A DNA stretch of 64,000 bases, from IMG/VR virus record IMGVR_UViG_3300024308_000018, positions 124,001 through 188,000 of that record; one strand, written 5' to 3'. Both the position numbers and the translations under genes were made by a program. Position 1 is the first letter of the stretch, and each line of letters begins with the position of its first letter. The notes below the pieces were generated by a model. The model was not told where the DNA came from and made no database searches. It saw nothing but the letters and a program-made list of their open reading frames with translations. Of the stretch, positions 60,598 through 64,000 are shown piece after piece.

Positions 60598-60849
60598 ATG
60601 CAAGTAGCGAAACGTCATCAAACTTCTGGGATGCGCGCGGTGTGTGCCCAGATCATGCAGAGCGTGTCGGAAGACCAGCAGCAATCTCCAAAGCAGCTGG
60701 CCTACGACAAGTTGTTCCGTGACAAGTGCGCGGAGAACAAGGTGAATCACCCGTTCGAACTCGGCGAACCTAACGCGATCAAAAAGTTCTTCTCTGAGCT
60801 TCAGATAGCGTGGGCTGAGTACAAAGACAAGCACGATATGGTTGACTAA
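60598..60849 (+). CDS. small hypothetical protein
   Basis: AGGAG RBS; preceded by a TAATTT box. Confidence 0.7.
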   Translation: MQVAKRHQTSGMRAVCAQIMQSVSEDQQQSPKQLAYDKLFRDKCAENKVNHPFELGEPNAIKKFFSELQIAWAEYKDKHDMVD

Positions 60850-60906
60850 GGCCCGTGCTCCCTGCCGTGACCAGTGCACGGCAGTTCTAACATCATTAGG
60901 AGACCT

Positions 60907-61230
60907 ATGAAATTCTCGGAACTTTTTGCATCGTTCACTGTGGAGCAAAGCATTTACATTCTCTACTGGATTGCTGGCATCGCAACGCATTGGGGAATGA
61001 AACTGCAACGCGAAGGTGTAACGGCCAAGCAATACTGGGCAAGCAAACCCCTCAACAGTATTGCCAGTATCCTCGTCAGCTTCGCGGTAGTGCTGAACTC
61101 GCTCTTGACGGGCGACAACGAATTCATGACTTACTTCGGCGCGGGTTTCGTAGCCGAGGCATTCATCAATCGTTACGTGGCTACCCAAGGAGGTGACCCA
61201 AATGTTGGAAAAGCTGAAAGCGTGCGGTAG
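60907..61230 (+). CDS. putative holin
   Basis: AGGAG RBS; 107 aa with 2-3 TM segments; upstream of spanin-like genes. Confidence 0.6.
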   Translation: MKFSELFASFTVEQSIYILYWIAGIATHWGMKLQREGVTAKQYWASKPLNSIASILVSFAVVLNSLLTGDNEFMTYFGAGFVAEAFINRYVATQGGDPNVGKAESVR

Positions 61231-61480
61231 CTGGCTGCTGGGGTTGCTCGCGCTGCTGGCTGCCGTCCTGTTCGGAGCGAACATGCTTCGTGGGAGAAAG
61301 CAGTCAGAAGCAGGCGACGCAAGCGCGCCCGCAGGCAAGGCCCCCATGGTGGAGGCGCAAGCCAAGGAGACGGACACGGTAAACATCAAGGTTGAGGAAA
61401 TCAACGAGGTGAAGCCGCCCGCCAAGACTCCCAAGGATAAAAACATGGAGGCCATGCTTGAAGACTATGACCGGCTTTAG
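61202..61480 (+). CDS. putative i-spanin-like inner-membrane protein
   Basis: GGAGG RBS; N-terminal TM WLLGLLALLAAVLFG; overlaps the lipoprotein gene. Confidence 0.55.
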   Translation: MLEKLKACGSWLLGLLALLAAVLFGANMLRGRKQSEAGDASAPAGKAPMVEAQAKETDTVNIKVEEINEVKPPAKTPKDKNMEAMLEDYDRL

Positions 61481-61958
61481 TGCGCGCGTTATCCTGTTCT
61501 GCGTAGTGCTGCTTTGCGCGGTGGCACTCAGTGCATGTAGCACTGTTCCGCAGGCAGGCCCCGAGCCCCGCACCAGTATCGAGCAGATCCCCGACATGAA
61601 GCAGGTGCAGGTTCCAAAGTTGGAGCCAGCGGCAAAGCCGAGGTTGGTGGTGCGTGAGATTGAAGGTGTGAAGGTGCCAACTCTCGGTAACGAGGGCATG
61701 GCGCAGCTGATAGACCTATACAAGCACGATGGGTATGCGACGAGCACCGCGAACTCTGCGGTGGAAGTTGCGAACGCCGCAATTGCGGAACGTAACCGAC
61801 TGCTTGCATTGGCTAAGGCGGAAGAGGCGGAGGGGAATCGACTACGTGCTGAGTTACACGTCGAGAAGGAGGCGAGAAAGGACGAGCGAATGTGGGGCAA
61901 CGTTGAACTCAACGCGACGCGTGCCCTGTTGCTGCTGTCCATTCTGGCCGGAATGTAG
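61467..61958 (+). CDS. lipoprotein, spanin-like
   Basis: Lipobox LSAC; Pro-rich linker; coiled coil; hydrophobic C-terminus. Confidence 0.65.
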   Translation: MTGFSARVILFCVVLLCAVALSACSTVPQAGPEPRTSIEQIPDMKQVQVPKLEPAAKPRLVVREIEGVKVPTLGNEGMAQLIDLYKHDGYATSTANSAVEVANAAIAERNRLLALAKAEEAEGNRLRAELHVEKEARKDERMWGNVELNATRALLLLSILAGM

Positions 61959-61999: not shown

Positions 62000-62575
62000 T
62001 TAATCGTAATACGCGATCATGCGGATGCCGTCTTCGGCGTAGGTGGCATGGTTCCACATATCGGTGTCCGGCACGTTGGCGGCAGCGGCGGCCGCAGAGA
62101 GCAGCAGACCGTACACACCATCTTGGCCTTCGCTTGCCATGGTCTCGACGTCGAACACGCGGGCACCGCTCTGCGCGTCTGACGCTACCTCGGTGAAATC
62201 CGCGTGGTCGCAGGCACTGATCACCTTGTCGCCGACCAGCACAACGAACGACGCCTCCTTCGGAACTCTAGTTCCCTGCACCAACAGCTCGTACTGCTCA
62301 ACGTAGAATGGCGACAGAGTTTTCACCGCGTCCGGTTTGCGGTCGAACATGAACTCGCCGTCGCCTGCAACTTCCAGATCCGGATACAGGTAGACTTGGG
62401 CGCTGGCCGCAAGTGACAGCTTCGTGGTGTCCAGCCCAGCGAACGGCGCGCTGTCCTCAGTCTCACCCGATACGCGGGCCCACGTGTTGATAGCACTCAA
62501 CACGCTTTGCGACGTGCTCAGGTAGGGCACTTCTTCGTGACGCATCACGTAGACTTTTGCAACTACAGATTCCAT
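62000..62575 (-). CDS. hypothetical protein (paralog of 62586)
   Basis: Shares VYV.R, LYP..V.G, PDAV..SPF..E..EL and SF.V..G motifs with its neighbour. Confidence 0.75.
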   Translation of the reverse strand: MESVVAKVYVMRHEEVPYLSTSQSVLSAINTWARVSGETEDSAPFAGLDTTKLSLAASAQVYLYPDLEVAGDGEFMFDRKPDAVKTLSPFYVEQYELLVQGTRVPKEASFVVLVGDKVISACDHADFTEVASDAQSGARVFDVETMASEGQDGVYGLLLSAAAAAANVPDTDMWNHATYAEDGIRMIAYYD

Positions 62576-62585
62576 GGCAGTTACC

Positions 62586-63158
62586 TTACAGTGGATCGCT
62601 CATGCGATTCAGGTTTACGATCATAGCGATGTTGTCTTCGGCACTAACGTGGACTTCCGCGCTATCGAATCCAGTATCCGGCAGGTTGGCCGCTGCATTG
62701 ATTACCGAACGATACAGGCCGACAAAGCCGTCACAGTCGTCAGCAATCTCTTCGACCTCGAAGAAGTCCCAGCCGCCCCACGTGTGCTCAATCGCGTAGT
62801 CGAGATCATGCTTGCCGTACTGCTCCATGGTCTGCGGCCCGAGGAACACAGCGAACGAGCATTCGGTCGGAACTACTTCGGCACTCACACTAAGTTCGTG
62901 CAGCTCCAAAGAGAATGGTGACGGCGACTGTACGGCGTCCGGCCCGCGCTCTTCGAACCAGAAGCCCTCGACTTTCTGCTCTGGATACAGGTTGACGGGC
63001 ACGGAGGTTCCGGAGTGCATGCTGACATAGCGCACGTCCTTGAAGTCGGTGCTCTTATCGGCCCACTCCTTGAACGCCTTGATTACCGCGTCCTGTGCTT
63101 CGCTGGTGCTGACAGTGTTGTCGCGCACGACATAGACTTGCATGTCTTTCATTTTCAT
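62586..63158 (-). CDS. hypothetical protein (paralog of 62000)
   Basis: Same shared motifs as 62000. Confidence 0.75.
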   Translation of the reverse strand: MKMKDMQVYVVRDNTVSTSEAQDAVIKAFKEWADKSTDFKDVRYVSMHSGTSVPVNLYPEQKVEGFWFEERGPDAVQSPSPFSLELHELSVSAEVVPTECSFAVFLGPQTMEQYGKHDLDYAIEHTWGGWDFFEVEEIADDCDGFVGLYRSVINAAANLPDTGFDSAEVHVSAEDNIAMIVNLNRMSDPL

Positions 63159-63167
63159 AGAGTGCCT

Positions 63168-63671
63168 TCAGTAGATTGAAGTTATGTACTCGGCTGCACC
63201 GCGCAGCGACGAGTGACGGGGACGCAACGTCAACACGGAATACGTCGGGTGGTCAACGCGGTTTTCAACATTCCAGCCGTGCACGCCGATAGGGAACTTG
63301 ACGTGGGGCTCAGGCACTTGCATTGGAATGATTGAGAGGTAAAGGACGTTGACGAACGGCATGGCCTGCTTATAGATTTCGGCCCCGCCGATCACAATCG
63401 GCTGATTGCGTGCAATAGACAACGCCTCTTCAATGCTACTGACGCAATCAACGCCACGGATCCGACGATTGGTCAGCACAATGTTGTGACGTCCGGGCAG
63501 AGGCTTCTTCGGCAGCGAATCCCACGTCCTGCGCCCCATAATGATCGAGCGATTAGCGGTAATTCCCGAGAACCACGCCAGATCTTCCGGAACGTGCCAC
63601 GGCAACGTGCCATCCATCAAACCTATCGCCAAGTTATTGGACACGGCGGCGATCATATCGAGCTTCTGCAT
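63168..63671 (-). CDS. folA: dihydrofolate reductase
   Basis: IAAV..IG..LPWHVPEDL, IMGRRTWDSLP..PLPGRHNIVLT, VIGGAEIY. Confidence 0.97.
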   Translation of the reverse strand: MQKLDMIAAVSNNLAIGLMDGTLPWHVPEDLAWFSGITANRSIIMGRRTWDSLPKKPLPGRHNIVLTNRRIRGVDCVSSIEEALSIARNQPIVIGGAEIYKQAMPFVNVLYLSIIPMQVPEPHVKFPIGVHGWNVENRVDHPTYSVLTLRPRHSSLRGAAEYITSIY

Positions 63672-63836
63672 CTAAATCACCCCGTTACCCATGAAGTCCA
63701 TGAGATCTTCGTAGTCGGAGATCGCAGCAGCCAGTTCCTCTATGCGTGCGTTGCTTTCGTCGTCCGTGTTGTCCAGTATGGCTTCGAGTTCAGCCAGCGC
63801 TGCTTGGTACGCGTCGTCGGTTTCAATCTTTTGCAT
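63672..63836 (-). CDS. 54-aa protein resembling the N-terminal domain of HigA antitoxin (not in the ORF track)
   Basis: GGGAG RBS; MQKIETDDAYQAALAELEAILDNTDDESNARIEELAAAISDYEDLMDFMGNGVI; stop abuts the DHFR ATG. Confidence 0.7.
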   Translation of the reverse strand: MQKIETDDAYQAALAELEAILDNTDDESNARIEELAAAISDYEDLMDFMGNGVI

Positions 63837-63999
63837 CTATAACTCCCTTGATGGTATTGACGCGGTGAATCGCAAGACCCTCATTGCGGGCTTTCACCAT
63901 CGTGTCCCAGAAGTTACCGCGCAGCGGGCACGCAATGGTCACGATGTCGCCGTTATCAGCACAGAAGATTTCGGCATTCCGTAGGCAGTCACCGTGGTG
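63823..63999 (-). CDS. partial CDS (3' end), possibly SLOG-like
   Basis: Open from the window edge: HHGDCLRNAEIF..IACP..W.T..AR..G; stop overlaps the next start. Confidence 0.5.
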   Translation of the reverse strand, partial: HHGDCLRNAEIFCADNGDIVTIACPLRGNFWDTMVKARNEGLAIHRVNTIKGVIDAKD

Positions 64000-64000
64000 G

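What the first reader, a model, noticed from the sequence alone, without database searches (positions are those of the whole stretch)
63672..63836. Orphan mini-antitoxin: HigA N-terminal domain without HTH or toxin
Seen: a 54-aa ORF below the track cutoff, with a good RBS and coupling to DHFR. Its sequence, I.TDDAYQAALAELEAILD....NARIEELAAAISDYE, matches from memory the I..E.DY..AL..LE.L.D......LE.L..LI..YE pattern of the toxin-binding N-terminal helices of E. coli-type HigA. The DNA-binding HTH is missing, and no HigB-like gene is adjacent within the window. Knowledge: some HigBA and toxin-antitoxin-chaperone systems act in anti-phage defence, and phages encode antitoxin mimics (e.g. T4 Dmd). 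Inference: a stand-alone HigB neutraliser acting as an anti-defence protein.
Basis: partly seen in the sequence, partly recalled or inferred. Interest (0 to 1): 0.7.

Follow-up and report, generated by a model that had tools for sequence, protein, structure and literature searches.

The report
Phage orphan HigA-like helical hairpin
A 230-kb wastewater phage carries a conserved, very acidic 54-residue two-helix protein that is related in sequence to the non-DNA-binding half of E. coli-type HigA antitoxins but has no DNA-binding domain and no toxin partner. It may disarm a host toxin, but a related phage has it fused to dihydrofolate reductase and another lacks it, so its job is still open.

Summary
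Window 63672-63836 (minus strand) is a real 54-aa gene with a good Shine-Dalgarno site. Its start overlaps the upstream gene by 14 nt, and its TAG stop abuts the DHFR ATG, in frame. It is under purifying selection (pN/pS 0.10-0.15).

The HigA resemblance is more than a remembered pattern. I built a profile from 38 bacterial E. coli-type HigA proteins, 33 of them with a HigB gene directly upstream. Among all 2,490 ORFs of the 229,746-bp phage it hits only this ORF (E 4e-6; next best about 1). The real score is 23.8 bits against a maximum of 12.7 for 5,000 shuffles. The match covers HigA residues about 23-64 (helices 2-3). Helix 1, the linker and the HTH are absent, and the phage has no HigB.

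The anti-HigB function is untested; the in-silico complex with E. coli HigB gave no answer. The gene's distribution complicates the story. It always sits just upstream of DHFR, it is fused to DHFR in one relative, and it is cleanly absent in another whose DHFR is 80% identical. 79 more distant phage DHFR loci lack it.

Best reading (0.35): a minimal decoy antitoxin that binds a basic HigB-family protein. Main rival: a DHFR-linked module. I rate it a new variant of a known kind, with moderate interest.

The parts
63672..63836 (-). 54-aa ORF encoding an acidic two-helix hairpin (net charge -13.5, pI 4.05), homologous to helices 2-3 of the N-terminal domain of E. coli-type HigA
   Evidence: ORF list; HigA HMM E 4.4e-6, the only hit in the genome; shuffle control; AF2 hairpin H7-22/H26-51, pLDDT 80; pN/pS 0.10-0.15 and charge
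63843..63849 (-). Shine-Dalgarno site AAGGGAG, 6 nt upstream of the ATG
   Evidence: read directly from the sequence; conserved in L007 and, with changes, in L008
63669..63674 (-). TAG|ATG junction: the stop of the mini-gene abuts the DHFR start, in frame. The preceding GGGGTGAT can serve as the DHFR ribosome-binding site.
   Evidence: the junction is identical in four phage relatives; the phage has no suppressor tRNA, indeed no tRNA at all
63168..63671 (-). dihydrofolate reductase, 167 aa, basic (pI 9.5), translationally coupled to the mini-gene
   Evidence: PF00186 E 1.9e-35; phrog_316 E 3e-39; pI
63823..64000 (-). 3' end of the upstream 211-aa gene of unknown function (genome 187823-188458). 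It overlaps the mini-gene start by 14 nt.
   Evidence: no Pfam or PHROG match; its homologue is directly coupled to DHFR in L091, where the mini-gene is absent

Best explanation
The gene encodes a free-standing copy of the helix 2-helix 3 hairpin of the N-terminal, non-DNA-binding domain of E. coli K-12-type HigA antitoxins. It is translated from a long minus-strand operon of nucleotide-metabolism genes, coupled to both of its neighbours. It has no HTH, so it cannot act as a repressor. It lacks HigA helix 1, so it probably does not form the HigA dimer. It carries a net charge of about -13.5. The most likely mode of action is stoichiometric binding of a basic partner protein through the face that HigA turns towards its toxin. 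The most plausible partner is a HigB-family (RelE-like) component of a host higBA, HigBAC or PD-lambda-2-type system, which would make the protein a minimal decoy antitoxin (counter-defence). Shown here: the gene is real, conserved and under purifying selection; it is homologous to the HigA hairpin; the HTH and any phage-encoded HigB are absent; the gene is accessory (present, fused or absent among relatives). Inferred, not shown: that it binds a HigB-like protein at all, that the hairpin alone is sufficient, and that this helps the phage.
For: Homology: an independent HigA HMM has this ORF as its only hit in the genome, E 4.4e-6 against about 1 for the next best. Shuffles reach at most 12.7 bits against 23.8. 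hhalign probability is 87%. The alignment keeps Y10, L14, I39 and E43 of the family. Structural alignment falls in the same register, HigA 21-74. 33 of the 38 HigA genes used have a HigB gene directly upstream, so the profile represents real toxin-antitoxin pairs. In E. coli K-12 HigA the HTH is C-terminal (PMC6987408), and type II antitoxins generally pair a DNA-binding domain with a separate toxin-neutralising domain (PMC8138530), which places the hairpin in the neutralising half. The same N-terminal region matches PD-Lambda-2_B (E 2.6e-3), the HigA-like partner of a HigB-like protein in a validated anti-phage system (PMC9519451). The protein is acidic (-13.5) and E. coli HigB is basic (pI 9.5). 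There is no HigB in the phage. The gene is accessory: it is absent from L091, whose DHFR is 80% identical. It is more conserved (91-94% aa) than the neighbouring DHFR (77-83%). There is precedent: Dmd, orphan DarG-like enzymes and orphan HigA-like ORFs in phages (PMC11257639; PMC7354431).
Against: There is no evidence of binding: the predicted complex with E. coli HigB did not reach the mark, although that is uninformative. The protein has only two of the helices of HigA. From my memory of Yang et al. 2016 (paper not held), HigA clamps HigB with both domains, so a bare hairpin may bind weakly or not at all. Every relative that has the gene carries it immediately upstream of DHFR, and one has it fused to DHFR. 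The gene sits in a metabolic operon, not in an obvious anti-defence cluster. The host is unknown, so whether it has an E. coli-type higBA is also unknown. The family is very rare: 5 relatives among 1.8 billion representatives, and none in the IMG/VR or JGI scans. Short helical hairpins can resemble each other by convergence; TPR- and PPR-like repeats also hit the profiles.
Confidence: 0.35

Rival explanations
1. The hairpin is a DHFR-linked module: an accessory subunit or N-terminal extension of the phage dihydrofolate reductase. It might mediate oligomerisation, or dock the basic DHFR to other enzymes of the phage dNTP-synthesis machinery. On this reading the likeness to HigA reflects reuse of a protein-binding hairpin.
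For: The order 211-aa gene, mini-gene, DHFR is kept in the window, L007 and L008 (mini-gene then DHFR also in the short L009), with an abutting in-frame TAG|ATG. In L003 and L004 the module is the N-terminus of a single 205-aa DHFR protein, seen in two separate sequencing runs. The fused hairpin still matches the HigA profile and keeps the conserved residues. The charges are opposite (-13.5 and +4).
Against: L091 has a DHFR 80% identical to the window's but no module, and shows no special change in its DHFR. 79 other phage DHFR loci lack the module. A second homologue, P0128, sits among small phage genes with no DHFR nearby. The mini-gene evolves more slowly than the DHFR, which does not suggest co-adaptation. 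In the AF2 model of the fusion the linker has low confidence (pLDDT 68) and pTM is only 0.74 despite a mean pLDDT of 90.6, which suggests a tethered rather than a docked hairpin. With in-frame abutting genes, a fusion needs only the loss of one stop codon.
Confidence: 0.2
2. The hairpin has been exapted to bind some other partner: the co-translated upstream 211-aa protein, another phage protein, or a host protein unrelated to toxins. The descent from HigA, or a convergent likeness to it, then says nothing about the present function.
For: The ORF is coupled to the upstream gene by a 14-nt overlap. All neighbours except DHFR have no known family. The query and P0128 both hit phrog_10398, a family of small phage proteins of unknown function. 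The fold is a generic hairpin: VIA-align Z for HigA is 5.4-6.1, no higher than for unrelated hairpins.
Against: The sequence match is specific to HigA among 2,490 phage ORFs. The 211-aa gene persists without the module in L091. No positive evidence points to any particular partner.
Confidence: 0.25
3. The real product is an N-terminally extended DHFR made by read-through of the in-frame TAG, and the 54-aa protein is only the termination product.
For: TAG and ATG abut in frame. A natural fused form exists. TAG is the rarest stop, 16 of 148 long ORFs.
Against: The genome has no tRNA gene at all, so no suppressor. TAG ends 16 other long ORFs. The TAG is kept in four diverged relatives and in an independent wastewater assembly. 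An SD-like GGGGTGAT and an ATG are kept for an independent DHFR start.
Confidence: 0.05
4. The ORF is a decaying remnant or a chance ORF with no function.
For: It is short. HTH-less HigA fragments that may be debris occur in bacterial TA islands. The gene is absent from one relative.
Against: pN/pS is 0.10-0.15, with synonymous divergence (pS) of 0.18-0.43. The RBS is good and the gene is coupled on both sides. The hairpin is conserved down to 42-49% identity in P0127 and P0128. The AF2 hairpin is confident.
Confidence: 0.03

Closest known systems
E. coli K-12-type HigA antitoxin (YgjM; PDB 5IFG, 6JQ4, 6KML), N-terminal domain
   Same: The helix 2-helix 3 hairpin is homologous. The profile match covers HigA residues about 23-64 at 24-36% identity to family members, with Y, L, I and E conserved. 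The acidic character is shared. The predicted structure superposes in the same register.
   Different: It lacks helix 1 (from memory, the dimerisation helix), the linker and the whole C-terminal XRE helix-turn-helix. There is no upstream higB. It is encoded by a lytic-type jumbo phage inside a nucleotide-metabolism operon, so it cannot be an autorepressor or half of an addiction module.
PD-lambda-2 component B (HigA-like Xre-peptidase fusion of an E. coli anti-phage system; Vassallo et al. 2022, PMC9519451)
   Same: Residues 3-44 match profile positions 6-50 of PD-Lambda-2_B (E 2.6e-3). PD-lambda-2B works with a HigB-like partner, PD-lambda-2A.
   Different: PD-lambda-2B has about 400 residues, with an HTH and a peptidase domain, and is itself toxic. 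The phage protein corresponds only to the first 50 or so residues. The match is weak.
Phage-encoded antitoxins, antitoxin mimics and orphan antitoxins (T4 Dmd against RnlA/LsoA; orphan DarG-like enzymes against DarTG1, PMC11257639; ICP1 antitoxin mimic, bioRxiv 10.1101/2023.12.14.571748; orphan HigA-like ORFs in mycobacteriophages noted in PMC7354431)
   Same: The logic is the same: the phage carries only the neutralising half of a toxin-antitoxin pair, without the toxin.
   Different: Activity against a toxin has been shown for Dmd and the DarG-like proteins, but not here. This protein is cut down to a single hairpin and is genetically tied to DHFR. As far as the papers I searched show, no phage inhibitor of a HigB-family toxin has been demonstrated.
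phrog_10398 (small phage proteins, profile of 66 positions, unknown function)
   Same: It is the best PHROG match for the query (E 1.2e-4) and for its distant homologue P0128 (E 7.7e-4). The size is similar.
   Different: The family has no assigned function. The matches are weak, and I could not inspect its members.

Membership tests
E. coli-type HigA antitoxin (HigBA type II TA) | N-terminal helical domain homologous to HigA residues about 1-70 | tested here: met
   Met for helices 2-3 only: HMM E 4.4e-6, the sole hit in the genome; shuffle control; hhalign 87%. Helix 1 is absent, since the protein starts at the hairpin.
E. coli-type HigA antitoxin (HigBA type II TA) | C-terminal XRE-type helix-turn-helix DNA-binding domain | tested here: not met
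   The protein ends 11 residues after the hairpin. There is no PF01381 or other HTH match. The full-length HigA HMM aligns only over the hairpin.
E. coli-type HigA antitoxin (HigBA type II TA) | Adjacent cognate higB (PF09907) gene, usually overlapping upstream | tested here: not met
   The neighbours are a 211-aa protein of unknown function and DHFR. Neither PF09907 nor PF05015 matches anywhere in the genome. The HigB HMM has a best E of 0.35. As a control, 33 of 38 bacterial HigA loci have a HigB gene upstream.
E. coli-type HigA antitoxin (HigBA type II TA) | Binds and neutralises HigB | tested here: inconclusive
   Complex prediction with E. coli HigB scored 0.20 against a mark of 0.34, which gives no answer either way. 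A wet-lab test is needed.
Phage orphan antitoxin / antitoxin-mimic counter-defence | Homology or mimicry of the toxin-binding part of an antitoxin, with no cognate toxin in the phage | tested here: met
Phage orphan antitoxin / antitoxin-mimic counter-defence | Accessory gene, variably present among related phages | tested here: met
   Present in the window, L007, L008 and L009; fused in L003 and L004; absent from L091.
Phage orphan antitoxin / antitoxin-mimic counter-defence | Relieves a host TA-based defence during infection | not testable with these tools
   The host is unknown. Portal relatives infect Erwinia, Pseudomonas, Dickeya, Burkholderia and others.
DHFR accessory domain or subunit | Consistent genetic linkage or fusion with DHFR | tested here: met
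   It is adjacent and coupled in four relatives and fused in P0127. However, all of these belong to one narrow phage clade.
DHFR accessory domain or subunit | DHFR of the clade depends on it or co-varies with it | tested here: not met
   The L091 DHFR (80% identical) lacks it. 79 other phage DHFR loci lack it. The homologue P0128 is not next to a DHFR.
DHFR accessory domain or subunit | Physical packing against the DHFR fold | tested here: inconclusive
   AF2 model of the natural fusion: hairpin pLDDT 84-87, linker 68, DHFR above 92, pTM 0.74. No contact data are available.

The most novel reading that the evidence does not exclude
The protein is the first phage-encoded inhibitor of HigB-family toxins: a 54-residue antitoxin reduced to a single acidic helical hairpin. 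It would neutralise or sequester the HigB-like component of host higBA, HigBAC or PD-lambda-2-type abortive-infection systems. It would also remain active when fused to an unrelated enzyme (DHFR), which would define the smallest toxin-binding unit of the HigA family.
Probability: 0.3. Interest if true: 0.75.

Novelty: new variant of a known kind. Interest (0 to 1): 0.5.

Why it matters
HigB-type toxins take part in validated anti-phage systems: PD-lambda-2 (PMC9519451) and toxin-antitoxin-chaperone systems (bioRxiv 10.1101/2024.02.24.581848). In the papers I could search, no phage counter-measure against them has been demonstrated. If this hairpin binds HigB-family proteins, it would add a counter-defence class and show that two helices of HigA are enough for toxin recognition. 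It would also give a compact tool for inhibiting or probing these RNases. The natural series of free, DHFR-fused and deleted forms in co-occurring wastewater phages provides ready comparison material. If it turns out instead to be a DHFR partner, it would be an unusual case of an antitoxin domain recruited into phage nucleotide metabolism. In either case the gene is cheap to test.

Tried and rejected
- **Single-sequence searches.** BLASTP against E. coli HigA found nothing. phmmer against PDB sequences found only noise. Pfam and NCBIfam had nothing above threshold. The homology appears only at profile level.
- **Profile of the mini-family against PDB.** No HigA hit. Adding the two divergent homologues lowered the hhalign probability to 53%, so the homology is probable, not certain.
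- **Fold searches.** HigA entries recur (Foldseek ranks 3, 4, 14, 17, 26, 33; VIA-align Z 5.4-6.1) but do not stand above generic helical hairpins, so the result does not discriminate.
- **Complex prediction of the mini-protein with E. coli HigB.** Score 0.20 against a mark of 0.34: no answer. I do not count it for or against binding.
- **Search for more relatives.** The IMG/VR scan and the JGI metagenome scan with the family alignment returned nothing except the source contig. tblastn against GenBank phages gave only E of about 10.
- **Suppressor tRNA or recoding.** No tRNA genes were found, and TAG is used as an ordinary stop. I rejected recoding.
- **Expression.** Metatranscriptome contigs cover parts of the DHFR gene and the downstream gene but not the mini-ORF, at very low depth. 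This is uninformative.
- **Literature on the HigA-HigB interface.** The primary structure papers (PubMed 27601326 and 33000860) are not held. What I say about the clamp and helix 1 is from memory.
- **Promoter and terminator scan.** Nothing on the minus strand near the gene, consistent with a position inside an operon.

Full report
**What is there.** The window is bases 124001-188000 of a 229,746-bp virus record with 56.6% G+C. Its portal protein is about 53% identical to those of jumbo phages of Erwinia, Pseudomonas, Dickeya, Burkholderia and related hosts. The same sequence occurs in wastewater, subsurface, groundwater and bird metagenomes from about ten studies. The finding is a 54-aa ORF on the minus strand, 63672-63836. 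It has a Shine-Dalgarno site, AAGGGAG, 6 nt before its ATG. The stop codon of the upstream 211-aa gene lies 14 nt inside it. Its own TAG is followed directly, and in frame, by the ATG of a dihydrofolate reductase gene (PF00186, E 2e-35). No sigma-70-like promoter or terminator lies on that strand nearby. The gene therefore sits inside a long minus-strand operon that also carries dCMP deaminase and thymidylate synthase further upstream.

**Is it a real gene?** Yes. Three near-identical proteins (89-94% identity) exist in other metagenomes, and each is in the same place, directly before DHFR. Pairwise pN/pS is 0.10-0.15, with synonymous divergence (pS) of 0.18-0.43. That is at least as constrained as the DHFR next door, which has pN/pS 0.15-0.21. 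AlphaFold2 predicts a two-helix hairpin (helices 7-22 and 26-51, mean pLDDT 80). The protein is extremely acidic, with net charge -13.5 and pI 4.05.

**Is the HigA resemblance real?** Single-sequence methods see nothing. There are weak leads:
- the N-terminus of phrog_1373, annotated 'transcriptional regulator' (E 5e-3);
- phrog_10398 (E 1e-4);
- the N-terminus of PADLOC's PD-Lambda-2_B (E 2.6e-3);
- a 58-aa ESM Atlas cluster named 'antitoxin HigA family' (score 0.87, a lead only).

I therefore built an independent test.
- I took E. coli K-12 higA and higB from the annotated genome.
- I collected relatives and then 80 loci from species-representative genomes.
- From 38 of these loci, spanning 41-100% identity to E. 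coli HigA, I built HMMs. 33 of the 38 have a HigB homologue directly upstream, so they are true higBA pairs.
- Searched against all 2,490 ORFs of 30 aa or more in the phage genome, the HigA N-domain HMM hits only this ORF (E 4.4e-6, 23.9 bits) and the full-length HMM does the same (E 3.5e-5). The next best ORFs have E of about 1-2.
- 5,000 composition-preserving shuffles of the query reach at most 12.7 bits, and the reversed sequence scores 1.4 bits.
- 3,720 ORFs from 80 other phage DHFR loci reach at most 9.9 bits.
- hhalign of the mini-family against 17 enterobacterial HigA proteins gives probability 87% (P 4e-6). This falls to 53% when two divergent homologues are added.

The match covers HMM positions 22-64, which correspond to E. 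coli HigA residues about 23-64 (helices 2 and 3). A joint alignment keeps Y10, L14 and E43 invariant and I39 nearly so. Structural comparison puts the model on HigA residues 21-74, the same register, with Z 5.4-6.1. Unrelated hairpins score as high, so the fold alone proves nothing. TPR- and PPR-like repeat proteins also touch these profiles, so some risk of convergence remains. I put homology at about 80%.

**What is missing.** The protein starts at the hairpin and ends 11 residues after it. It therefore lacks HigA helix 1, the linker and the C-terminal HTH. PMC6987408 confirms that the HTH of K-12 HigA is C-terminal. The phage encodes no HigB: PF09907 and PF05015 give nothing, and a HigB HMM built from the 33 cognate toxins has a best E of 0.35. 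The module is present once in the genome. So the protein is not a HigA antitoxin in the family sense, because two defining features were tested and not met. It is a domain fragment of one.

A full-database profile search found only five relatives.
- One, P0127, is a 205-aa protein in which the hairpin (residues 1-45) is fused by a linker of about 10 residues to a DHFR domain. It comes from two sequencing runs and lies in a syntenic phage locus. One of those runs also contains a split-gene relative, L008.
- The four split forms share the junction GTGATTTAGATG.
- L091, from the same metagenome as L007, has a DHFR 80% identical to the window's. Its upstream 207-aa gene runs straight into the DHFR start, with no mini-gene. 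No copy lies elsewhere in the 130 kb held of that record, which is about 49% complete; the positive control is.
- 79 more distant phage DHFR loci have no such module, either free or fused.
- The other short homologue, P0128 (56 aa), lies among small overlapping phage genes beside a ProQ-like gene, with no DHFR nearby. It shares phrog_10398 with the query.
- The AF2 model of the natural fusion has a confident hairpin (pLDDT 84-87) and DHFR domain (above 92), but a weak linker (68) and pTM 0.74. This looks like a tethered rather than a docked hairpin, although no contact data are available.
- There is no tRNA gene in the genome and TAG is an ordinary stop, so programmed read-through is unlikely.

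**Interpretation.** The module is self-contained, selected and accessory. It works free or attached to DHFR, and DHFR works without it. That pattern fits a small add-on gene better than an obligate enzyme subunit. The narrowness of the clade means the adjacency may be mere inheritance, and with abutting in-frame genes a fusion needs only the loss of one stop codon. An acidic hairpin taken from the non-DNA-binding half of an antitoxin most plausibly binds a basic protein, and HigB-family toxins are the family's known partners. E. coli HigB has pI 9.5, but so does the phage DHFR.

HigB/HigA-like pairs take part in validated anti-phage systems. In PD-lambda-2, component A is HigB-like and component B is HigA-like with a peptidase domain (PMC9519451). 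Phage or plasmid orphan antitoxins are an established idea (PMC11257639 and PMC11541004). PMC7354431 even notes orphan HigA-like ORFs in mycobacteriophages.

I therefore rank the options as follows:
- decoy antitoxin, 0.35;
- another binding partner, 0.25;
- DHFR-linked module, 0.20;
- read-through product, 0.05;
- non-functional remnant, 0.03.

The one in-silico binding test allowed, with E. coli HigB, gave no answer. From my memory of Yang et al. 2016 (paper not held), helix 1 of HigA is needed for dimerisation but not for forming the HigB-HigA heterodimer, and HigA clamps HigB with both domains. The first point favours a helix-1-less binder. The second warns that a bare hairpin may bind weakly.

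**Related observation in bacteria.** A profile of hairpins recovers many 59-98-aa HTH-less HigA N-domain ORFs. Several are probably truncated genes. Others recur:
- P0151 in an Aeromonas toxin-antitoxin island;
- P0146 in at least 24 contigs of a prophage, beside Fic and a Gp49/HI1420 pair;
- P0178 in a Spirosomataceae genome.

None has an adjacent E. coli-type HigB. Free-standing HigA N-domains are therefore not unique to this phage, but their function is equally untested.

**Verdict.** DHFR linkage is a real competing clue. Against what is known, this is a new variant of a known kind (orphan antitoxin-like proteins on mobile elements) and not a member of the HigA antitoxin family proper. Interest is moderate (0.5). 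It would rise to about 0.75 if HigB binding were shown.

Noticed in passing
window 63669-63674 (-); L003:6001-6618; L004:4724-5341: The mini-gene's TAG and the DHFR ATG abut in frame. In a related phage the two are one 205-aa fused ORF (P0127), seen in two sequencing runs, one of which also holds a split-gene relative (L008).
   Followed up: yes
L091:1878-3004: A natural deletion variant. A related phage from the same metagenome as L007 has the 207-aa gene running straight into a DHFR 80% identical to the window's, with no mini-gene. The 130 kb held of that record has no copy elsewhere.
   Followed up: yes
window 62586-63158 (-) and 62000-62575 (-): Two tandem paralogues (190 and 191 aa, 35% identical, E 2e-22) of unknown function lie directly downstream of DHFR. 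The related loci L007 and L003 show only one such gene after DHFR.
   Followed up: partly
whole genome G000 (229,746 bp): ARAGORN finds no tRNA or tmRNA gene in this 230-kb phage. Stop codon use among 148 long ORFs is TAA 74, TGA 58, TAG 16.
   Followed up: partly
window 60598-61958 (+): A plus-strand cluster converges on the minus-strand operon. It holds small ORFs that look membrane-associated and a 166-aa ORF (61458-61958) with a signal-peptide-like N-terminus and a lipobox-like LSAC motif. It may be a lysis or spanin cassette.
   Followed up: no
L171:2501-2749; L173:1499-1750 to L176; L177:2501-2707: HTH-less HigA N-domain ORFs of 68-83 aa occur in bacteria without an adjacent E. coli-type HigB: in an Aeromonas TA island, in a recurrent prophage beside Fic and a Gp49/HI1420 pair, and in a Spirosomataceae genome. 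They may be debris or free-standing modules.
   Followed up: partly
P0001 (L007:101-265): One source names the 54-aa homologue 'predicted metal-dependent enzyme (double-stranded beta helix superfamily)'. This cannot be right for a 54-residue two-helix protein.
   Followed up: no
window 63168-63836 against L007 and L008: The mini-gene is more conserved (91-94% aa; pS 0.18-0.39) than the DHFR gene it is coupled to (77-83% aa; pS 0.57-0.66). Either it is under unusually strong constraint, or it has been exchanged recently between these phages.
   Followed up: partly
window 62500-64000: The locus is held at 70-100% of sampled words in wastewater, subsurface, groundwater and bird metagenomes from about ten studies. 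Two metatranscriptome runs have contigs over the DHFR gene and the downstream gene but none over the mini-ORF, at very low depth.
   Followed up: partly
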